DNA of 64,000 nt, from positions 62,001 through 126,000 of the IMG/VR virus record IMGVR_UViG_3300048924_000191; one strand, written 5' to 3'. Position 1 is the stretch's first letter. Each line of letters begins with the position of its first letter. The translations under genes and the position numbers were made by a program. The notes under the pieces were generated by a model, which had not been told where the DNA came from, did not search any database, and saw only the letters and a list, made by a program, of their open reading frames with translations. Of this stretch, positions 293-63,912 are shown piece after piece.

Positions 293-297
293 AGCAG

Positions 298-330
298 CAT
301 ACAGCCGGGGCGCAATGCCCCGGCTGTATG
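298..330. terminator. Bidirectional hairpin terminator, CATACAG...CTGTATG family
   Basis: CATACAGCCGGGGC-GCAAT-GCCCCGGCTGTATG perfect stem between convergent genes. Confidence 0.85.
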
Positions 331-345
331 TCGTTGCCGTAAGGA

Positions 346-13053: not shown

Positions 13054-13058
13054 TACAG

Positions 13059-13092
13059 CATACAGCCGGTGGGGAGACCCACCGGCTGTATG
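13059..13092. terminator. CATACAG...CTGTATG hairpin terminator
   Basis: Perfect stem after spanin genes. Confidence 0.85.
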
Positions 13093-13096
13093 TCGT

Positions 13097-13423
13097 TTAC
13101 TCACACGGAGCGCCGTCGCACATGATTTTCACTTCGGCTTTCTTCTTGCGGTTGTAGTCGTAAGCCTTCTGCAACCTGAGATTGTCTTTCTCAAGTCCGT
13201 TAGCCTGATCGATGTAGGTTTGTGCCCACATGTCCAACTTCTGTCGTGGAGTCGCCGTGTCGTACACGAAACGATTCGGTGGAGGAACCAGCGTGCACGA
13301 AGTCAGCCATTGATCATCCACCCCGGAATAGCGAATCGTGTTGCGATCCACATACACCGTCACCGTACGCGTACACCCAGCCAACACCAACGCCATCACA
13401 AGGACGGCGACTGTACGGATCAT
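13097..13423 (-). CDS. Putative o-spanin (Rz1-like lipoprotein)
   Basis: Lipobox LAGC, C.L.PPP; ATGA overlap with upstream i-spanin. Confidence 0.7.
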   Translation of the reverse strand: MIRTVAVLVMALVLAGCTRTVTVYVDRNTIRYSGVDDQWLTSCTLVPPPNRFVYDTATPRQKLDMWAQTYIDQANGLEKDNLRLQKAYDYNRKKKAEVKIMCDGAPCE

Positions 13424-53685: not shown

Positions 53686-55296
53686 TCAAACGGCGATAGG
53701 GATGTGAATGTCCTTACCTGGGATGTAGCCATAGACCTCGACGCCGTCAGCGGTGATATCGTCGATGTTGGTGAATTGCTGCTTGAAGCGAATGCGTGGA
53801 TCACACTCGACGTCAGAACCGCAGTCCAACATCTCTTCCATCGCCTCCACCTGGTTGGCGTAGACGTGAGCATCCACACCTAGGGTCACCAGCTCGTCGG
53901 CTTCCATGTTTACGACATGGGCAATCGAGTGTAGCAGGTAGGCGTACTGGATGACGTTGAAAACTGCGCCAGCAGGGACGTCATTACTGCGCAGCAACAC
54001 GAAGCCGGAGATCGCCCGAGTCGGCAGGTTGTTGGCCTTGATGTACTCGAGGATCTTTTCCTTGGCTGTTTCTTTGTCGGAGAAGAGATCTTCGTTCAGA
54101 CGACCTTCCGCGTCTCGGTGCGTGTTGAGATACGCTTGGAACAGACCGCGGTTCTCGAGCATACCTTCGAGCTCCGAGAAGTCCATTTCCCACGACACCA
54201 CCTGGAAGTACAGATGGCAGGGCGGGAGAGCTGCTTGCCAGATACGTCCTGGGTTCCAGGCGATCATGAGCATGCGGCGATCGTCAGGGTTGGTTTTGAG
54301 CGCATTGACGATGTTCTGCAGTTGGTCGATCTCGCGGTGCATGACCATACGGCCGCTGTCCCAACCGATACCTTCCTGGAGCACACCAAGGTTTTCGTAA
54401 CCTTGATCGCGGTAAGCTTGCACCAGAGCCAGATCACTGCCATTCACCAGTTGTGTGTCTTGCCACTTCCGCCACTGGACACCGTAGCTACCTTCACCGA
54501 TGGAAGCATCGAGCAATCGGTACTTCGGCACTTCAAGCTGATCGAGGATGTGAACCACCGTCGATACCTTCTCAGGATCGATGAAGTGTTCTTCGAAGTC
54601 TTGCGCCTCCGGGTTCCAGACCGTGACCTTGACCGGGTTCTCCTCCGCAAACATCGCGGCAGCTTCGATGATGCGCGGATAGATGATGTTCCATTTCACG
54701 CCGTTGTTCTTCGATACGCGGGAGAGTCGCTTCTTGAGCGAGACTTCCTCACCACCACCGACCTTGACTTCGGTAGGTACGCCGAATTTGTCCAGGGCGG
54801 TGTGGAGCATTTCGATACCGGTTTGGGTAACGTTGTTCCACTCGAACTGTTCGCCACCCAGCGTGAAGACGAAGTGAGTCGAACCGATCATCGACTTCGA
54901 ACTCTCGTACATGTCGATAAGTGCACGGATGTTGCGGACCTGCTCAGGATCGGTCAGGTAACCAACGCGGTCTTCGAGACGCACTTTCTCGAAGCGTGGG
55001 ACGTCGTACACCGCAGTGCCTGGAATGAACCAGCTGTCCCAGATACCGATCTTGCGATCGCACAGTGGTTTGATCGACGGATTGCCGGTCTTGAACATGT
55101 CCATCTCAACGAGACTGTTCATGTAGCGAACCAGGCGGGTGGACAGGATCGGCATACGCAGGCCGCCGAGAGAGAAGCGCATCATTTGCGCAAACAGCAT
55201 GTGGGTGCCGTGACCGGTACGCGACGACTTCCAGTGGCCGTAGTTCATGACCGCTGCGGTCAGTTGATGCAGTTGCGAATCAGCAGGGTTCAGCAT
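53686..55296 (-). CDS. thyA: Thymidylate synthase with large insertions
   Basis: RTG.GT, IWDSW, YGVQWR.W, DQL, NPDDRR, AWNP, ALPPCH, RSND, FN, DAHVY. Confidence 0.92.
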   Translation of the reverse strand: MLNPADSQLHQLTAAVMNYGHWKSSRTGHGTHMLFAQMMRFSLGGLRMPILSTRLVRYMNSLVEMDMFKTGNPSIKPLCDRKIGIWDSWFIPGTAVYDVPRFEKVRLEDRVGYLTDPEQVRNIRALIDMYESSKSMIGSTHFVFTLGGEQFEWNNVTQTGIEMLHTALDKFGVPTEVKVGGGEEVSLKKRLSRVSKNNGVKWNIIYPRIIEAAAMFAEENPVKVTVWNPEAQDFEEHFIDPEKVSTVVHILDQLEVPKYRLLDASIGEGSYGVQWRKWQDTQLVNGSDLALVQAYRDQGYENLGVLQEGIGWDSGRMVMHREIDQLQNIVNALKTNPDDRRMLMIAWNPGRIWQAALPPCHLYFQVVSWEMDFSELEGMLENRGLFQAYLNTHRDAEGRLNEDLFSDKETAKEKILEYIKANNLPTRAISGFVLLRSNDVPAGAVFNVIQYAYLLHSIAHVVNMEADELVTLGVDAHVYANQVEAMEEMLDCGSDVECDPRIRFKQQFTNIDDITADGVEVYGYIPGKDIHIPIAV

Positions 55297-56901: not shown

Positions 56902-57939
56902 TCAGATGCGAAAATCGCGTTCGGCTGAGATGGCGATTGGCTCGCCAGTATATGGAGTGCGTTCTACCCGCAGCTCTTTGATCCAGTCGCGTTGCTTGAT
57001 CGACAGGTTGTTGACCACACTCTCAACGATCTCGCCAAGGAGACGCGCTGGGAACTGATCGAACGAGGTCTTGCTCAGACCCACCATGTCTTCGGTCTCG
57101 TGATCGGAAGTGACGAACTCCACCCGCTCGTCTTGATATACGACGCCGATGCGGAACTGCTCATCGCCACTCACCACTTCGACCTCGACTCCCCGAACGT
57201 AGATGACCGAGTTGGTCTTCACTTCTGGAGTCGGTCGCTTCTTCATGCTGTTGATCGCGGTCATCAGGTGCGGCATCATCTGCGCGAAGACCTGCTCGCG
57301 ACTGACGTTGGCGTCGATCCGGACGAGCGCATCTTGTTCGCCAATACACAACAGGTTGCGGTTGTTGTACTGACCCCATGGACTTGCGATATCGCGATAA
57401 GCCCGGCAGATCGCTTGTTTGTACTCGGCAGGCTTATCGTCGTAGTAGTCCGCTGGCCGACCCGACTTCTCGCGTTCCAGACGCAGACGCTCTTCTGCGA
57501 CTTCATAGTCGACATCGAAAATGAACGTCAGGTCAATGTTGAAACAGTCTTTGCGAACCGCAGCGTCGATGTTGTGGAAGTCAAGCCAATCCACACCACC
57601 GACTACATGTTGATAAACGAACGACGAGTAGTGGTACCGATCGGACACCACCACCGCACCGCGAGTCAAGGCGGGGATGATGACTTCACGGATCAGTTGT
57701 GCTCGTGCGGCGTAGTTCAGCAACAGTTCGGTGATTGGGTGTTTGGTTTCACCTGTTTCGACCGGTTGTTTGTTGAGTTCGCGGATCTTCTCGGCGAACA
57801 TCGTACCACCTGGTTCACGGACTTCCACTACTTCCAGACCGTGGTCACGGAAGAGCTTTACCACATTACCGCGCTGTCCGGTTTTACCGGACATGTCCGG
57901 ACCATCGAGTACAACGAGCATACCTGGGTATTGTTTCAT
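56902..57939 (-). CDS. tmk: Thymidylate kinase with C-terminal extension
   Basis: DGPDMSGKT, REPGGT, AARAQ, SDRY..SS..YQ. Confidence 0.9.
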   Translation of the reverse strand: MKQYPGMLVVLDGPDMSGKTGQRGNVVKLFRDHGLEVVEVREPGGTMFAEKIRELNKQPVETGETKHPITELLLNYAARAQLIREVIIPALTRGAVVVSDRYHYSSFVYQHVVGGVDWLDFHNIDAAVRKDCFNIDLTFIFDVDYEVAEERLRLEREKSGRPADYYDDKPAEYKQAICRAYRDIASPWGQYNNRNLLCIGEQDALVRIDANVSREQVFAQMMPHLMTAINSMKKRPTPEVKTNSVIYVRGVEVEVVSGDEQFRIGVVYQDERVEFVTSDHETEDMVGLSKTSFDQFPARLLGEIVESVVNNLSIKQRDWIKELRVERTPYTGEPIAISAERDFRI

Positions 57940-57986: not shown

Positions 57987-58367
57987 TTACTTGACGATGA
58001 ACGGCATCAAGTCATTGAACTTGACGGCAGTATCGCCATTGGCCAGATTGGCGTGGAACCCACCCTTTCCATTACCGAGGATGGAGAGGATCTTGTCGGC
58101 CTTGCCTTTCTTTGGTCCGGAACGATACGCGACCATCATCCCTTCGATTGGGGTCCATGGATCGCAAGGCGCAACGACGGTTTCGTCATGTGGTTCGTCT
58201 TCTGGGGTATTCAGGGATACTTCCAGACGAGCGATGATTTCGGAGTTCATACTCCGGTGGTGGGTGCGGGCAGCTTCGGCGATACGTTCGCGCATGCCGT
58301 CAGGAAGCCTGACGACAAACTTGTCTGCAGTACGGGAAGAATAAATAGCTTGTTTGAGAGGACGCAT
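57987..58367 (-). CDS. amrZ: AmrZ-like Arc/ribbon-helix-helix protein with replaced C-terminal domain
   Basis: [49 protein letters not shown] matches the Pseudomonas AmrZ N-domain. Confidence 0.85.
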
Positions 58368-58401
58368 TCTAAAACTCCATTGGATTGTGGTTACACAGGG
58401 C

Positions 58402-58430
58402 AGTAATGTAGTATCAAAAGAATCTTTGAC
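58402..58430 (-). promoter_or_regulatory. Putative early promoter
   Basis: TTTTGATACTACATTAC. Confidence 0.6.
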
Positions 58431-58432
58431 AG

Positions 58433-58464
58433 CATACAGCCGGGGCGTTTGCCCCGGCTGTATG
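58433..58464. terminator. CATACAG...CTGTATG hairpin terminator
   Basis: Stem identical to 298-330, loop differs. Confidence 0.85.
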
Positions 58465-58470
58465 TCGTGA

Positions 58471-59478
58471 TCACTTGAGGGACTTGAACAGAATCTCGGC
58501 CAACCCCTTCTCCATGTCAGCGAGGATACGGTTCTCGCCGATCTCCATGCCGTGGAACTCACCTGCGACTGGGAAGAGATTCAGCAGATGTGCAATGTCT
58601 TCGTCATCGTCAGGGAACCTCGAGATCCACCAGCGGTAATCGTCGGTATCGTCAAGGTACCATTCACGGTCGCCGATGTCGAAGCATTGATCCAACAGCC
58701 CCGACAGCTTGAGCATCAGCTCACAACACTTCTTGGCTTCCGGCAGGGTGAGTGCCTGGATATAAGAATCCATGCCGCCGTAAAGGGGCTTACGCCTCTC
58801 CAGAACCTTCGAGTGAGGAAGCGTACCGATCTTCCCACAGACCAGCGTGAGGTTGGTGAACTTCACGGCACTGTGGTCGATCTTCAACGCGTAATCAGCG
58901 TACACGCCCTCGGCCAATGGCTTGGCATGACGGTAGGCTTCTTTAGGACTAGGTAACCGTTTAGCTTCTTCGTAGATCTTCTCAAGAGCCTGGGTCATGT
59001 TGGCACGTAGCTTGAGGTAGTTGATCAACCACCGACCGAACGCGCCAAAGTTCTCTTCAACGCTAGACAACCACCGATGGTTCGGCCAGTGCCAGAGATG
59101 CATCAGCGTTGCCGAGTTACCGAGGATGATGGTCTTCTTCTTGAGCATCTCTTCGGTGATCTTGGAAGAGTCGTGCTTGAGTTCAGAAATCATCTTCTCA
59201 GCAGCGGCTTTCTCTTCAGGCGTGGGGAAGCCGAGGATGCGTTTGAGGACATCACCAAAAGATTCGAAGGACTCTTCAGGGTCATTACCCTTGTCGTCTT
59301 TCTTCTCAGCACGGTCAGGAAGCTTCTCCCACCATTCGGGATCTTCCTTACGCTTCTTCTTGTCCTCGTCGTACCACTCCTTCGCTACCTGCTGAGAGAT
59401 ATTGCGAGATTTGGCGAACTCGGCGTCATGCGCGGCCATCCGCATGAAGCGAGCTTGGGACTTACTATTACTCGGCAT
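58471..59478 (-). CDS. Putative virion head protein with charged propeptide
   Basis: Charged N-terminus then EESFES (S-x-E site); mature part resembles helicase C-terminal domain; TATG upstream. Confidence 0.6.
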
Positions 59479-59543
59479 TTTCGCTCCCCAGAACAAAAAA
59501 AAAGAAGGAATGTGCGGGGTGTCGAGCACCCCGCTTCATATCC

Positions 59544-61102: not shown

Positions 61103-61558
61103 TCAGTCCTTGGTAAATACGTAGACGGAGAGACCGCAGCCTTTTGGGAATACTTCCTCAAAGATAGGCTTGACTTCGGACTCCCAATCCAGTTGTCCTG
61201 TTTGCTTACCACACCCGACGCGCGGCATGCAGACCAACTCGATGTTCTTACTTTCCATGTACTCCTTCAAGCGATTAGCAGACTGACGGATGAGTTCAAC
61301 GTCAGATGGATTGGCCCAGTGGTACTTCGTCGGGAACATGGCCAGTAACCCATCTTTGGTTTCACACACGGTCATTTCAGCAGCGGTCATGTTTCCCCGT
61401 CTGCAGATTTTCCGATAGTGATTGAACGCGTCTGGATAACGCATCCTCATCCAACACGCCAACCCCTTCCCTGCAACACCGACCGTATTGACCGGTACCA
61501 CGAGGAGAGGTTTATTCTTCAGCGTCCCTAGCAAGTTCCCCTGCAGTTCTACTAACAT
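61103..61558 (-). CDS. Macrodomain, DarG/TARG1-like
   Basis: GNLL, PVNTVGVAGKGLA, FPTK.HW..PS, MPRVGCG..G.LDW..V. Confidence 0.85.
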   Translation of the reverse strand: MLVELQGNLLGTLKNKPLLVVPVNTVGVAGKGLACWMRMRYPDAFNHYRKICRRGNMTAAEMTVCETKDGLLAMFPTKYHWANPSDVELIRQSANRLKEYMESKNIELVCMPRVGCGKQTGQLDWESEVKPIFEEVFPKGCGLSVYVFTKD

Positions 61559-63317
61559 CGGCGGTGTCCTGTAAAAGTCGTCCCATTCTGACCAGCAACT
61601 CACTACCACGCTCTACCTTACAAAAATCAATGAATCGACGAGCATTCGTGCTACTCATGTAATCCTCAAGGATCGCCTGACCGCCTGTAGAGACTGCGAT
61701 CTCCTGGAGTCGACAGATATCCATCTCTTCCATCAAAAGGTTCGCATCTCGCAGCGTAAGGCCTGGTAGACCCATGTTACCCAAGTGCGCGGCAGGTAGG
61801 TAATGAAGTGCTTCCTGGATCTGTCTGATCCATTTCTCCGAACTGGCTTTGGCGAGCTTATAGTTGTCGAACACCTCGGCCTTAAGTTCATACAGATCGG
61901 GAATGGCTTTGAGATGTCCATCCCGGATCAGGGCCGGAATCACCACTTTGGGAATAGCGATACCCATACCCGTGTTGCTCAGGTACTGATAGAACCGTTC
62001 CGCAATCTGTCCTGGACATTCGAACGTATTGCAGCAACGTAGAGTCGGTCCTCGGCTGCTGTCGTAAAGAAGGAAGCTATTGCATGCCGGACAGTGTTCA
62101 GGAATCTCTACCGGACTAGCGTCCACGGCGCGGGGTTCATCTACACGTTTGCTGAACACGAAGTCGACACTACCGTGATGACGACGAACCAAGATCTTGT
62201 CGCCAATCCAGATCTTGGTTGCCTGTAGAAGACCCACACCACCCAACACCAGATCGTCTCTCTCCTTACCCATTACGGTAATCGGTTCGACCTCGACCCG
62301 TGTATTGATAGCTCCATCGATGGCAACTTCGAACTTGATGTCGGTGACTGTCGTGCAGTTCCTGTTCCCGTATCTCCAGACAACACCCCATCCTGCACCG
62401 AACCGAAAGTTTCTGCCGATCGGTCCCGGCTGATGAGATTGTCGATCCAACATGTCGTCGAGTTTAAGAAGAACGCCATCAACGGTGTACGGCTCCGTAT
62501 CGATAACCTTCTCAAACTTTTCGATCTTCGCTGCGACCTCGACGTAGTCAACGGAAGGTGTGGGTTTGTTTACGCCGATGTGGAGGTAGTGGGCTCGACG
62601 CAAGCGGTCAGTTGCCGTGAGATCGTTGGCAAACAGATTGGACTGTGGGCGATCGATCATCGGGACATCTTCAAGAATGAAGTCCAGCCGGTCTTCGCAA
62701 CCCTCTAACGTCCGATCGAAGATCGCTGACGACATGGAGAACGGGTTCTTAAATACCCGGACCATGGTACCGTTAGTTAACTGCTCGTTGACTGCACGGA
62801 ACTCCGAGATCGGCATGGTCACCGTGCCGTGGAACGTCCTGATGGCATCAAAGACCGGAATCTTCAACGGCACACCACGCACCTGACTGACGATATCGTA
62901 AACATCGCTACCGGTCATGCCGTTACCACGAGCACCCACCCAAACCAGATTGCCGTGGGCGTAGACCAGCTCTACTTCATGACCTACGTAACGAGGTTCA
63001 ACCCGGTACGTACTTCGACCCGTATGCGTCAGGTAACGGTCCAACTCCTCCACTTCGTCTGCTTGCCGGAAATCCCAGATGCGCGCGACGTGAGGTAGAG
63101 TTGGTTGATTGGTGTAAAGATTGGTGAGTGGTCGATCCTCACCCATCGCATCGGCTATAGTCCACTCAGGATGGCGGTTCTCGAGCGCTTGGAGACAGTT
63201 CAGTAACTGTTCGTAAACACCCTCGGAGATTGTATTCAATCCGACCTCTCGCAACTTACGGTGGTCGATCACCGTGCTAGCAAGTAGGTTGTAGGTTTTC
63301 AGCAATGAGTTTTCCAT
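61512..63317 (-). CDS. NAD+-dependent DNA ligase homologue, catalytic Lys absent
   Basis: LE..HPEW, EPRYVG (for EPKxDG), RGNG..G.DV, DGVLLK, OB fold, CPAC..C..C zinc finger, DLY.L HhH; no BRCT. Confidence 0.85.
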   Translation of the reverse strand: MENSLLKTYNLLASTVIDHRKLREVGLNTISEGVYEQLLNCLQALENRHPEWTIADAMGEDRPLTNLYTNQPTLPHVARIWDFRQADEVEELDRYLTHTGRSTYRVEPRYVGHEVELVYAHGNLVWVGARGNGMTGSDVYDIVSQVRGVPLKIPVFDAIRTFHGTVTMPISEFRAVNEQLTNGTMVRVFKNPFSMSSAIFDRTLEGCEDRLDFILEDVPMIDRPQSNLFANDLTATDRLRRAHYLHIGVNKPTPSVDYVEVAAKIEKFEKVIDTEPYTVDGVLLKLDDMLDRQSHQPGPIGRNFRFGAGWGVVWRYGNRNCTTVTDIKFEVAIDGAINTRVEVEPITVMGKERDDLVLGGVGLLQATKIWIGDKILVRRHHGSVDFVFSKRVDEPRAVDASPVEIPEHCPACNSFLLYDSSRGPTLRCCNTFECPGQIAERFYQYLSNTGMGIAIPKVVIPALIRDGHLKAIPDLYELKAEVFDNYKLAKASSEKWIRQIQEALHYLPAAHLGNMGLPGLTLRDANLLMEEMDICRLQEIAVSTGGQAILEDYMSSTNARRFIDFCKVERGSELLVRMGRLLQDTADVSRTAGELARDAEE

Positions 63318-63912
63318 CACGAAGGCACTTCTCTCGGTGTTGTGCGTGGACGACGTTGCAGAAGAACTCCAGTCGCGCTTCCAGATCAGGTTCAATTAGG
63401 TTGAATACCGGGATATCCCTTTCGAGGGCTATCTTGACAGCCGTAGCTGTTCCACCAGTCACCTGCGGGCCGTTGCTTTTATACGGAGCCCAAGTCAGAA
63501 CGAAATCAACGGGGGAGTTCAGATCATCGCCAAGCACCTGATACGGGTTTCTGGAGTGGTGTGCGACACTACCACGTCCAGCGTTATGCCATCCACCTCT
63601 GGCTTTCTCACCGAGGGCGGCAGCTTCTTTGTAATTCTCAAAATGGTCCTGAGGGCAGTAGAAGCCATTCTCAGGATCGTGACGCAGTCCAGACATTCCT
63701 TCCCAGGAAATGTAGATACGGTTCTTGGACTTGTCGGAGTTCTTGTGAGAGTACGCTCCACGCAGCCCTGCGTAGTCCATTCCTTTCGGACAGCCGCCAC
63801 TGTACATCGAGTAGCCGAGCTCTGCCAGAATGTTCGTGAACCTGAACGTGAGTTTGAGGATATGTTGCGGAGTCTCTCTCGATCCAATGCAAGCGTATCG
63901 TTTGGTGATCAT
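63277..63912 (-). CDS. DprA/Smf-like (SLOG) protein
   Basis: IGSRETP, SGG...G.D, RN.YQVLG.DL..PVDF, GGT..AV.IA....IPVFNL. Confidence 0.85.
   Translation of the reverse strand: MITKRYACIGSRETPQHILKLTFRFTNILAELGYSMYSGGCPKGMDYAGLRGAYSHKNSDKSKNRIYISWEGMSGLRHDPENGFYCPQDHFENYKEAAALGEKARGGWHNAGRGSVAHHSRNPYQVLGDDLNSPVDFVLTWAPYKSNGPQVTGGTATAVKIALERDIPVFNLIEPDLEARLEFFCNVVHAQHREKCLRDGKLIAENLQPTC

What the first reader, a model, noticed from the sequence alone, without database searches (positions are those of the whole stretch)
57987..58367. Phage-captured AmrZ DNA-binding domain with a swapped C-terminus
Seen: the first ~52 aa match Pseudomonas AmrZ almost exactly, including the N-terminal extension; the remainder is an unrelated beta-rich segment; it has its own early-type promoter. 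Established: AmrZ controls alginate, Psl, flagella, pili and c-di-GMP genes and uses its C-domain to oligomerise. Inference: a dominant-negative or reprogramming mimic that changes surface receptors or biofilm during infection; also points to a Pseudomonas host.
Basis: partly seen in the sequence, partly recalled or inferred. Interest (0 to 1): 0.7.

Follow-up and report, generated by a model that had tools for sequence, protein, structure and literature searches.

The report
Jumbo-phage copy of host regulator AmrZ
A giant root-associated Pseudomonas phage encodes a small DNA-binding protein whose front half is almost identical to the host's master regulator AmrZ and whose back half is a different, phage-specific domain; such phage 'AmrZ look-alikes' are already known to rewire host gene expression, so this is a new member of a known kind.

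Summary
Window 57987-58367 (minus strand) encodes a 126-aa protein. Residues 1-52 are an AmrZ-type ribbon-helix-helix (RHH) domain: PDB 3QOQ E 6e-22, and 92-94% identical to AmrZ of P. fluorescens-group species. The rest is unrelated to AmrZ: an acidic linker, then a confidently predicted small beta-barrel of KOW/SH3 type.

It is not a one-off swap or a recent capture:
- The same two-domain protein sits at the same position (hairpin, promoter-like motif, this gene, thymidylate kinase, then thymidylate synthase) in related ~250-kb phage contigs.
- The barrel also occurs in phage SM1 gp115 and probably in PaBG gp184.
- Nucleotide identity to any host amrZ is at most 78%, and about half of the same-amino-acid codons differ. 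This points to long purifying selection.

All AmrZ DNA-contact and on-DNA dimer-dimer residues are kept. A homotetramer model puts the barrels in contact (ipSAE 0.83, best control 0.00).

Phage AmrZ homologues are published. Borges et al. showed complementation of an amrZ deletion and CRISPR-Cas repression. Li et al. 2026 showed that PhiPA1019 Gp53 represses fleQ, pslA, amrZ and ftsZ.

Verdict: a new member of a known kind, most likely a host-regulon hijacker. A dominant-negative mode and 'early' timing remain untested.

The parts
57987..58367 (-). Coding sequence of the 126-aa AmrZ-like two-domain protein (stop codon included)
   Evidence: ORF and translation; Pfam Arc E 1e-20; full-length homologues at 50-62% identity on 114-254 kb phage contigs
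58212..58367 (-). [quoted passage not shown]
   Evidence: 3qoq AmrZ E 6e-22 over residues 1-52. 92-94% amino-acid identity to Pseudomonas AmrZ. K16/V18/R20/R12 and H36/H37/R38/E49 correspond to AmrZ K18/V20/R22/R14 and H38/H39/R40/E51 (PMC3325190). Most of these positions are invariant in 37 family members.
58173..58211 (-). Residues 53-65: acidic, proline-rich linker of variable length
   Evidence: pLDDT below 50 at residues 57-64; length and sequence vary among homologues
57990..58172 (-). Residues 66-126: small beta-barrel of KOW/SH3 type; predicted self-association module
   Evidence: pLDDT about 88-90. Foldseek top hits are KOW, SH3 and Tudor-like barrels, all with weak E-values. ESM Atlas structural TM 0.70-0.76 to KOW, L24, NusG and KIN17-SH3. 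No Pfam hit. Conserved W71, P73, G76, V79 and P122. Barrel-barrel contacts in the tetramer model.
58375..58378 (-). Ribosome-binding site GGAG, 7 nt before the ATG
   Evidence: Read from the sequence; GGA(G) conserved in six orthologous loci
58404..58427 (-). Promoter-like element AAAGATT-N10-TACATTA (T-rich stretch plus a -10-like heptamer), about 37 nt upstream of the ATG
   Evidence: TACATTA is invariant in 4 of 6 orthologous loci and ACACATT in the other two. Four two-block sites in the genome, all on the minus strand, against 0.1-0.3 in shuffles. Similar T-rich + TACATT sites at window 13029, 30544 and 38672. Not a sigma-70 consensus. Timing not testable.
58429..58468 (-). Long G+C-rich hairpin directly after the upstream ORF: one copy of a genome-wide repeated hairpin, a likely transcript boundary
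   Evidence: MFE -31.7 kcal/mol, z -8.3. Eight copies in the 243-kb genome with covarying inner stems. Compensatory changes in orthologous loci.
56902..57939 (-). Downstream gene, probably co-transcribed: thymidylate kinase with an extra C-terminal part (345 aa)
   Evidence: PF02223 E 9e-29. A 47-nt gap with AGGAG and no hairpin. Same gene order in L005-L009 and L011.

Best explanation
The gene encodes a phage version of the Pseudomonas global regulator AmrZ.

Shown by sequence. The N-terminal ribbon-helix-helix domain keeps every residue that AmrZ uses to read GGC half-sites, and every residue used for the small on-DNA dimer-dimer contact.

Inferred: DNA binding. The domain should dimerise and bind the same A/T-flanked GGC/GCC operators as the host protein.

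Predicted: the C-terminal domain. AmrZ's helical tetramerisation tail is replaced by a flexible acidic linker and a KOW/SH3-like beta-barrel. The barrel is conserved only in phage proteins of this architecture. In a tetramer model the barrels contact each other, both within an RHH dimer and between two dimers. The barrel would then supply a phage-private way of building the dimer-of-dimers that AmrZ-type repression needs.

Inferred from characterised homologues and context: role. The protein is translated from its own transcription unit at the head of a nucleotide-metabolism operon. It most likely occupies AmrZ operators on the host chromosome and overrides the AmrZ regulon during infection. 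That regulon covers flagella via fleQ, exopolysaccharide, c-di-GMP enzymes and, where present, CRISPR-Cas.

The phage is phiKZ-like and probably nucleus-forming. The host chromosome is therefore the DNA most directly accessible to a protein made in the cytoplasm.
For: Domain identity:
- Pfam Arc E 1e-20.
- 3qoq E 6e-22 over residues 1-52.
- 92-94% identity to Pseudomonas AmrZ.

Contact residues. AmrZ K18, V20, R22 and R14, and dimer-dimer residues H38, H39, R40 and E51 (PMC3325190), correspond to K16, V18, R20, R12, H36, H37, R38 and E49 here. K16, V18, R20, R12, H37 and R38 are invariant across 37 family members.

Selection:
- 84-93% amino-acid identity in the 44-codon RHH core among the syntenic phage orthologues, and 93% (median) to host AmrZ.
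- Only 70-79% nucleotide identity to host amrZ, with about half of the same-amino-acid codons differing.
- The C-domains have drifted to 20-54% identity.

C-domain:
- pLDDT about 88-90.
- KOW/SH3-like by Foldseek and Atlas.
- Outside WD40 repeat artefacts, found only behind an Arc domain.

Self-association. The four-copy model scores ipSAE 0.83 against a best control of 0.00. On the tool's calibration this mark was reached by 20 of 30 proteins solved as pairs and 1 of 23 solved as single chains. The runs share at least 80% of contacts, and partner pLDDT is 75-76. The lowest-error contacts are barrel to barrel (residues 72-78 and 122-126).

Precedent:
- Borges et al. (10.1101/673095) found AmrZ homologues on 14 Pseudomonas phages and plasmids. 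Five of six complemented an amrZ deletion. Those of PaBG, phi3 and JBD68 repressed type I-F CRISPR-Cas. PaBG gp184 is a homologue of this protein.
- Li et al. 2026 (PMC13650114) showed that Gp53 of PhiPA1019 is an early gene. Gp53 binds and represses the fleQ, pslA, amrZ and ftsZ promoters.
- The essential Gp53 residues R15, R21, M35 and N36 fit SM1 gp115 exactly and correspond to R20, R26, M40 and N41 here. The C-domain of SM1 gp115 matches this family's C-domain profile (hhalign 97%, E 2e-11).

Phage type. PhuZ E 4e-19, non-virion RNA polymerase beta subunit E 3e-57, and a weak chimallin-like match in the adjacent ORF.
Against: - No experiment exists on this protein. DNA binding, targets and timing are all inferred.
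- The tetramer score may partly reflect memory of solved RHH dimers. The calibration was for two copies, not four.
- The fold matches for the barrel are individually weak (Foldseek E above 0.005) and no Pfam family matches.
- The gene heads a phage operon behind a conserved promoter-like element. That is the classical position of an autoregulating RHH protein, so phage DNA could be the real target.
- Nucleus formation is inferred from marker genes only, and the chimallin match is weak (E 0.007).
- The identity of Gp53 with the SM1 gp115 type is inferred from length, genome size and residue numbering, not from its sequence.
Confidence: 0.6

Rival explanations
1. It is a regulator of the phage's own genes, in the manner of P22 Arc and Mnt. 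It binds an operator at its own promoter or at other phage promoters. In this way it autoregulates the nucleotide-metabolism operon (this gene, tmk, then thyA) or helps time phage transcription. The likeness to AmrZ is then only shared ancestry within the Arc family.
For: - It is the first gene of a conserved transcription unit behind a hairpin and a conserved TACATTA element. RHH proteins are commonly autoregulators at the head of an operon.
- A GCC lies just downstream of TACATTA in 3 of 6 orthologous loci.
- GGC-N5-GCC sites with A/T-rich spacers are about twofold enriched in the genome (17 against 7.4 in simulations).
Against: - The GGC-N5-GCC enrichment comes largely from the stems of the repeated hairpin, and no conserved operator was found.
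- 93% (median) amino-acid identity to host AmrZ, maintained at saturated synonymous sites, is hard to explain if only a phage operator had to be recognised.
- In a nucleus-forming phage the protein would need import to reach phage DNA (inference).
- Characterised homologues act on host promoters.
Confidence: 0.2
2. It is a dominant-negative poison of host AmrZ. The near-identical RHH domain forms mixed dimers with host AmrZ monomers. Because the phage chain lacks AmrZ's tetramerisation tail, mixed dimers cannot assemble into functional AmrZ tetramers, and so the host regulator is inactivated rather than imitated.
For: - Only three substitutions separate residues 1-52 from P. fluorescens-group AmrZ: A32 for V, T35 for N and V50 for Q.
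- The strong conservation of the whole domain, not just the DNA-contact residues, fits a need to stay compatible with the host chain.
- AmrZ needs its C-terminal domain for tetramerisation and function (Xu et al. 2016, cited in PMC13650114).
Against: - Heterodimerisation was not tested here.
- Phage homologues complement an amrZ deletion, so they act as AmrZ rather than against it.
- Over-expressing amrZ did not rescue Gp53 phenotypes, and Gp53 activity required its own DNA binding.
- Host AmrZ dimers made before infection are intertwined obligate dimers, and subunit exchange may be slow (general knowledge of RHH dimers).
Confidence: 0.12
3. It is an RHH antitoxin, or a ParG-like centromere-binding protein of a partition system.
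For: - Weak sub-threshold Pfam hits to FitA, HicB and ParD-like RHH antitoxins.
- Two PHROG families that it matches carry the label 'partition protein ATPase'.
Against: - The neighbours are thymidylate kinase and an unknown 352-aa protein. There is no toxin and no ParA-type ATPase.
- No PADLOC match.
- The Pfam antitoxin hits are below their cut-offs and cover only the generic RHH.
- The PHROG label cannot describe a 126-aa RHH protein.
Confidence: 0.03

Closest known systems
AmrZ (AlgZ) of Pseudomonas, PDB 3QOQ (Pryor et al. 2012, PMC3325190)
   Same: - The N-terminal arm and RHH domain are 85% identical to the P. aeruginosa protein and 92-94% identical to P. fluorescens-group alleles.
- All base-contacting residues (K, V and R on the beta-strand, plus the arm arginine) are the same.
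- All on-DNA dimer-dimer residues are the same.
   Different: - It has no homologue of the helical C-terminal tetramerisation domain. A linker and a KOW/SH3-like barrel stand in its place.
- It is encoded by a jumbo phage, not by the AlgU-controlled chromosomal locus.
- Nucleotide identity is only 70-78%.
AmrZ homologues on Pseudomonas phages and plasmids (Borges et al., bioRxiv 10.1101/673095; published 2020), e.g. amrZ of PaBG, phi3 and JBD68
   Same: - It is phage-borne, and the DNA-contact residues are perfectly conserved.
- PaBG gp184 is a detectable homologue. It covers residues 9-81 at 59% identity, and its C-domain matches this family's profile at 70% probability.
- These homologues complement an amrZ deletion, and some repress type I-F CRISPR-Cas.
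   Different: - This copy is from an uncultivated phage of root metagenomes, and none of the tested functions has been shown for it.
- As far as the held text shows, that work did not address the C-terminal domain ('C-terminal' does not occur in it).
- For a nucleus-forming phage, relief from DNA-targeting CRISPR may matter less (inference).
Gp53 of Pseudomonas phage PhiPA1019 (Li et al. 2026, PMC13650114), taken to be the SM1 gp115 type
   Same: - It has the same length (126 aa) and the same two-domain plan.
- The essential residues R15, R21, M35 and N36 correspond to R20, R26, M40 and N41 here.
- The C-domain of SM1 gp115 is homologous (hhalign 97%).
- Gp53 is an early gene that binds AmrZ targets.
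   Different: - The RHH core of the SM1 type is only 57% identical to AmrZ and lacks the AmrZ N-terminal arm. This protein's core is 93% identical (median) to host AmrZ and has the arm.
- The phage lineages differ: a 94-kb Samunavirus-like phage against a 243-kb phiKZ-like phage.
- The equation of Gp53 with SM1 gp115 is my inference.
P22 Arc and Mnt repressors
   Same: - It has the same RHH fold family (PF03869).
- Mnt likewise adds a separate C-terminal tetramerisation module to an RHH dimer (weak match to 1mnt, E 0.12; general knowledge).
   Different: - Sequence similarity is low.
- Arc and Mnt regulate phage genes of a temperate phage.
- The oligomerisation module of Mnt is helical, not a beta-barrel.

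Membership tests
AmrZ orthologue (chromosomal Pseudomonas regulator) | Arc-type ribbon-helix-helix domain | tested here: met
   PF03869 E 1e-20 over residues 11-54; 3qoq E 6e-22
AmrZ orthologue (chromosomal Pseudomonas regulator) | Extended N-terminal arm preceding the beta-strand | tested here: met
   Residues 1-11 align without mismatch to P. fluorescens-group AmrZ, and to 3qoq with a 2-residue gap
AmrZ orthologue (chromosomal Pseudomonas regulator) | DNA-contact residues K18, V20, R22 (and R14) and dimer-dimer residues H38, H39, R40, E51 | tested here: met
   K16, V18, R20, R12, H36, H37, R38 and E49 are present (residue roles from PMC3325190)
AmrZ orthologue (chromosomal Pseudomonas regulator) | AmrZ C-terminal (helical) tetramerisation domain | tested here: not met
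   All matches to AmrZ end at residue 52 (one at 59). The C-terminal halves do not align. The predicted fold is a beta-barrel.
AmrZ orthologue (chromosomal Pseudomonas regulator) | Chromosomal locus of a Pseudomonas genome | tested here: not met
   The gene lies in a 243,378-bp virus record with terminal repeats, among phage genes
Mobile-element AmrZ homologues (Borges et al.) | Encoded on a Pseudomonas phage or plasmid, with the AmrZ DNA-contact residues conserved | tested here: met
   Phage record. Residues conserved. The Pseudomonas host is inferred, not shown.
Mobile-element AmrZ homologues (Borges et al.) | Complements an amrZ deletion or represses CRISPR-Cas expression | not testable with these tools
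   Needs genetics in a Pseudomonas host. Shown only for other members.
Gp53-type phage RHH regulators (PhiPA1019) | RHH with the residues shown essential in Gp53 (R15, R21, M35, N36) | tested here: met
   R20, R26, M40 and N41 are present and invariant in the family (PMC13650114)
Gp53-type phage RHH regulators (PhiPA1019) | Homologous C-terminal domain | tested here: met
   The C-domain profile against SM1 gp115 residues 56-126 gives hhalign probability 97.3%, E 2e-11. This holds for Gp53 only if Gp53 is of the SM1 gp115 type, which is inferred.
Gp53-type phage RHH regulators (PhiPA1019) | Early expression and binding to the fleQ, pslA, amrZ and ftsZ promoters | not testable with these tools
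   No RNA run holds this phage (the best RNA run shares 0.05 of the sampled words). Binding needs EMSA or DAP-seq.
KOW domain (PF00467) | Match to the family profile | tested here: not met
   None of 30 C-domains matches PF00467 at E up to 1
KOW domain (PF00467) | SH3-like five-stranded barrel superposable on KOW domains | tested here: inconclusive
   Atlas TM 0.70-0.76 to KOW, L24, NusG and KIN17-SH3 models. Foldseek probabilities are 0.9-1.0 but E-values are 0.005-0.2. Small barrels match many superfamilies.
Type II antitoxin with RHH domain | Adjacent cognate toxin gene | tested here: not met
   The neighbours are thymidylate kinase and an unknown protein with a virion-protein-like N-terminus. 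No PADLOC match.

The most novel reading that the evidence does not exclude
The KOW/SH3-like barrel may be more than a substitute oligomerisation tail. It could be a phage-private assembly or effector module that makes the mimic orthogonal to the host protein. The phage chain would then do three things:
- bind AmrZ operators with host-identical specificity;
- tetramerise only with itself;
- form dead-end mixed RHH dimers with newly made host AmrZ.

The host regulator would be both replaced and poisoned. In a nucleus-forming phage this would act only on the exposed host chromosome. The unusually strong purifying selection for host-identical RHH sequence would reflect this need to stay compatible with the host chain.
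Probability: 0.2. Interest if true: 0.6.

Novelty: new member of a known kind. Interest (0 to 1): 0.35.

Why it matters
Phage-encoded look-alikes of the host regulator AmrZ are a documented way for phages to override host programmes for motility, biofilm, cell division and CRISPR-Cas.

This copy extends the family in three ways:
- It places the family in uncultivated phiKZ-like jumbo phages of plant roots.
- It shows that the host-identical DNA-binding domain is an old feature held by selection, not a fresh capture.
- It defines the so far undescribed C-terminal barrel as a conserved partner domain with a testable role in oligomerisation.

It offers a clean pair of proteins (host AmrZ and the phage mimic, three substitutions apart in the DNA-binding domain) for asking how a swapped C-terminal module changes regulatory output. 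That question was left open in the Gp53 paper. The finding does not open a new category.

Tried and rejected
1. Recent capture from a host. Rejected: the best nucleotide identity to 79 host amrZ genes is 77.6%, while host-host identities have a median of 89.7%. Fewer than half of the same-amino-acid codons are identical.

2. A unique domain swap. Rejected: there is a whole family with the same architecture and synteny.

3. A sigma-70 promoter or an intrinsic terminator with a T-run. None was found by the consensus scan.

4. TACATTA as a general, abundant early-promoter motif. Not supported by numbers: 13 copies against about 20 expected from composition (my estimate). However, 11 of the 13 lie on one strand, and only about 4-5 sites show the fuller pattern. 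K-mer enrichment with a maximal-order Markov model was uninformative.

5. My own crude longest-ORF gene calling of the genome picked wrong-strand ORFs and was dropped.

6. The C-domain profile search returned many large WD40 proteins. These are summed weak repeat matches, not relatives.

7. An AmrZ-type operator in the phage. GGC-N5-GCC sites are modestly enriched, but mostly because the repeated hairpin stems contain them. The loop of the hairpin upstream of this gene (GGC-AAAC-GCC) resembles amrZ1 but has 4-nt spacing and is not conserved in orthologues.

8. Nucleotide search against GenBank phages found no close relative.

9. The Noxifer gp106 C-terminus could not be shown to be homologous (hhalign 11%).

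10. The supplements of the Gp53 paper are not held, so the Gp53 sequence itself could not be compared.

11. No usable RNA-seq run exists for this phage.

12. A tree of the RHH domain was not built. The 44-52 nearly invariant residues and saturated synonymous sites leave no signal.

Full report
**What is there**

On the minus strand, window 57987-58367 holds a 126-codon ORF. Its ATG at 58367 is preceded by GGAG, and all homologues begin at the same position. The longer 191-aa GTG reading, which overlaps the upstream gene, is therefore not the gene.
- Pfam finds an Arc-type ribbon-helix-helix (RHH) domain at residues 11-54 (E 1e-20).
- The only strong match among solved structures is AmrZ of P. 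aeruginosa (3qoq). It aligns to residues 1-52, N-terminal arm included (E 6e-22), and the match ends at residue 52.
- In 80 bacterial genomes, all Pseudomonas or Stutzerimonas but one, the match again covers residues 1-52 only. Identity is 90-94% in nearly all and highest in P. fluorescens-group species.

**The genome**

The window is part of a 243,378-bp virus record with direct terminal repeats.
- It has no close relative among GenBank phages at the nucleotide level.
- Its helicase is about 42% identical to those of phiKZ-like jumbo phages.
- It encodes a PhuZ tubulin homologue (E 4e-19) and a homologue of the phiKZ non-virion RNA polymerase beta subunit (E 3e-57). In the ORF next to the polymerase gene, as in phiKZ, there is a weak match to the nuclear-shell protein (E 0.007).
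- Near-identical DNA occurs in root, rhizosphere, plant and soil metagenomes.

I take it to be an uncultivated, probably nucleus-forming jumbo phage of a plant-associated Pseudomonas. The host is inferred, not shown.

**Not a one-off and not recent**

A search of 5.8 billion proteins found full-length relatives (50-62% identity, 99-100% coverage) on contigs of 114-254 kb.

In five such phages the gene order is the same: a gene for an unknown protein of about 330 aa, a 100-nt gap, this gene, thymidylate kinase, one to three small genes, then thymidylate synthase. A sixth (L010) lacks the kinase but keeps the rest.

The two halves have evolved at very different rates:
- Across the syntenic phage orthologues, the 44-codon RHH core is 84-93% identical in amino acids.
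- The C-terminal domain is only 20-54% identical.

At the nucleotide level the first 156 nt are at most 77.6% identical to any of 79 host amrZ genes (median 75%). Fewer than half of the codons that encode the same amino acid are identical. By contrast, host genes are 89.7% identical to one another at the median. Phage orthologues differ from each other to the same degree as from hosts.

So the host-like protein sequence has been held by purifying selection for long enough to saturate synonymous sites. 'Captured' in the sense of a recent theft is wrong. Which way the ancestral transfer went cannot be told from these data.

**The DNA-binding half**

The AmrZ-DNA structure paper (PMC3325190) names the functional residues:
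- K18, V20 and R22 read the 5'-GGC half-sites, which lie five base pairs apart.
- R14 is needed at algD.
- H38, H39, R40 and E51 form the small dimer-dimer contact on DNA.

With the two-residue offset, these are K16, V18, R20, R12, H36, H37, R38 and E49 here. All are present, and six of the eight are invariant across 37 family members. Only three positions in residues 1-52 differ from P. fluorescens-group AmrZ: 32, 35 and 50. The same DNA specificity as AmrZ is therefore the natural inference.

**The other half**

An acidic linker (pLDDT below 50) follows residue 52. Residues 66-126 are predicted with pLDDT of about 88-90 as a small barrel of four to five strands.

What the barrel resembles:
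- Foldseek returns KOW, SH3 and Tudor-like barrels: YorP, NusG/Spt5/RfaH KOW, L24 and L14e. Probabilities are high but E-values are weak.
- The ESM Atlas gives TM 0.70-0.76 to KOW, L24, NusG and KIN17-SH3 models.
- No Pfam family matches.

Where the barrel occurs:
- A profile of 30 C-domains searched against 1.84 billion representatives found, apart from WD40 proteins that are repeat artefacts, only proteins of 100-140 aa. Every one of these that I scanned carries an Arc domain in front. The exception is one 65-aa stand-alone or fragment.
- The barrel is also present in SM1 gp115 (hhalign 97%, E 2e-11) and probably in PaBG gp184 (70%). Noxifer gp106 is unresolved.

The most conserved residues are W71, P73, G76, V79 and P122.

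**What the barrel may do**

A four-copy complex prediction scored ipSAE 0.83, against 0.00 for the best of three controls.
- In the tool's calibration this mark was reached by 20 of 30 proteins solved as pairs and by 1 of 23 solved as single chains.
- The calibration held two copies, not four, and used the tool's own alignments rather than mine.
- The three runs share at least 80% of contacts, and partner pLDDT is 75-76.

The contacts with the least expected error are not in the RHH domain but between barrels (residues 72-78 with 72-78, and 122-126 with 70-73). One barrel also touches the barrel of a chain from the other RHH dimer. The conserved W71, P73 and G76 lie in that predicted interface.

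This supports, but does not show, that the barrel replaces AmrZ's helical tail as the module that joins two RHH dimers. The score cannot measure affinity, and RHH dimers are well represented among solved structures.

**Surroundings**

Directly after the stop codon of the upstream gene lies a 15-pair G+C-rich hairpin (-31.7 kcal/mol, z -8.3).
- It is one of eight copies of a hairpin repeated around the genome, whose inner stems covary.
- Orthologous loci keep it through compensatory changes.

After the hairpin comes AAAGATT-N10-TACATTA, about 37 nt before the ATG.
- TACATTA is invariant in four of six orthologous loci, and the other two have ACACATT.
- The two-block pattern occurs four times in the genome, all on the minus strand, against 0.1-0.3 expected.
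- T-rich + TACATT sites precede other genes at window 13029, 30544 and 38672.
- No sigma-70 consensus is present.

A review of jumbo-phage RNA polymerases states that each such phage has its own AT-rich motif of about 10 nt, centred near -10, upstream of early operons (PMC7598289). The phiKZ early motif combines an extended -10 with an upstream T-rich part (PMC8244752).

The element here fits that description. It is rare, though, and without transcript data I cannot say that it is an early promoter.

There is no hairpin between this gene and thymidylate kinase. The gene therefore probably heads the operon.

**What is known**

Two papers make this a known kind.

Borges et al. (bioRxiv 10.1101/673095):
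- They found AmrZ homologues on 14 Pseudomonas phages and plasmids, with the DNA-contact residues perfectly conserved.
- Five of six complemented an amrZ deletion.
- PaBG gp184 and the phi3 protein are among the hits for this protein.

Li et al. 2026 (PMC13650114):
- Gp53 of the 94-kb phage PhiPA1019 is a 126-aa RHH protein and the most strongly induced of the early genes tested.
- It binds the fleQ, pslA, amrZ and ftsZ promoters and represses those genes.
- It needs R15, R21, M35 and N36.
- It is not functionally interchangeable with AmrZ.

Those four residue numbers fit SM1 gp115 exactly (126 aa, 93-kb phage), so I take Gp53 to be of that type. As far as the held texts show, neither paper deals with the C-terminal domain.

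**Most likely mechanism, and rivals**

Best supported (about 0.6): an AmrZ mimic that binds AmrZ-type operators on the host chromosome as a dimer of dimers held together by its own barrel. It overrides the AmrZ regulon during infection.
- Shown: the domain identities, the residue conservation, the family and synteny, and the selection pattern.
- Predicted: the barrel fold and its self-contacts.
- Inferred from homologues and context: DNA binding, host targets and timing.

Rivals:
- A regulator of phage genes, for example autoregulation of the operon it heads (about 0.2). I found no conserved operator, and the fidelity to the host sequence argues against it.
- A dominant-negative partner of host AmrZ (about 0.12). 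This could coexist with mimicry. It is untested here and disfavoured as the main mode, because homologues complement an amrZ deletion and Gp53 needs its own DNA binding.
- An antitoxin or partition protein (about 0.03). It has no partner gene.

**Verdict**

This is a new member of a known kind.

The modest new points are:
- the definition of a conserved RHH + KOW-like-barrel family;
- a predicted oligomerisation role for the barrel;
- evidence that host-identical sequence is maintained by selection in a clade of phiKZ-like jumbo phages from plant roots.

Noticed in passing
window 293-335, 13054-13097 and 58429-58468 (also G000:C1 near 9.18, 13.27, 33.34, 199.13 and 215.06 kb): A long palindromic hairpin (core CATACAGCCGG ... 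CCGGCTGTATG) is repeated eight times around the phage genome. It always lies between genes. The inner stem pairs covary between copies. It looks like a phage-wide transcript boundary or RNA-stability element, and it lacks a T-run.
   Followed up: partly
window 13029, 30544, 38672 and 58405 (minus strand); also 63973 (plus strand): A T-rich stretch followed by TACATT(A) lies 30-55 nt upstream of ribosome-binding sites, three times directly after a copy of the hairpin. It is a candidate phage-specific promoter class of few members. 11 of 13 TACATTA copies in the genome are on one strand.
   Followed up: partly
window 56902-57939 (minus strand): Thymidylate kinase is 345 aa. The kinase domain occupies residues 11-158, followed by about 160 residues with no family match. 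Orthologues are 215-231 aa in some relatives and 482 aa in another (L011), so the C-terminal addition varies.
   Followed up: no
window 53686-55296 (minus strand): Thymidylate synthase is 536 aa, and the best ThyA match covers only the last ~310 residues. Relatives are 537-652 aa, so a long N-terminal extension of unknown function is conserved.
   Followed up: no
window 58471-59529 (minus strand): The upstream 352-aa protein has no Pfam match. Residues 18-63 match the N-terminal ~45 residues of PHROG families annotated as virion structural proteins. It is lysine- and glutamate-rich.
   Followed up: no
window 61103-63395 (minus strand): An NAD-dependent DNA ligase (627 aa) is followed by a macro-domain protein (168 aa). 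The same pair lies upstream of the AmrZ-like gene in related contigs (L005-L007, L011).
   Followed up: no
G000:C1 178520-181900 and 191562-192446 (outside the window): A homologue of the phiKZ gp055 RNA polymerase beta subunit lies next to a 686-aa ORF that weakly matches the phiKZ nuclear-shell protein (E 0.007). A PhuZ tubulin homologue is also present. Together these suggest a nucleus-forming phage.
   Followed up: partly
P0121-P0129 and similar: The profile of the C-terminal barrel draws apparently significant scores (E down to 5e-15) from large WD40-repeat proteins, by summing many weak repeat matches. These are a search artefact and not relatives.
   Followed up: yes
run X5, sample S5: A run labelled with a single coded organism rather than a metagenome holds 76% of the sampled words of this region. 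If that organism is a cultured bacterium, it could point to the host or to a cultivable relative of the phage.
   Followed up: no
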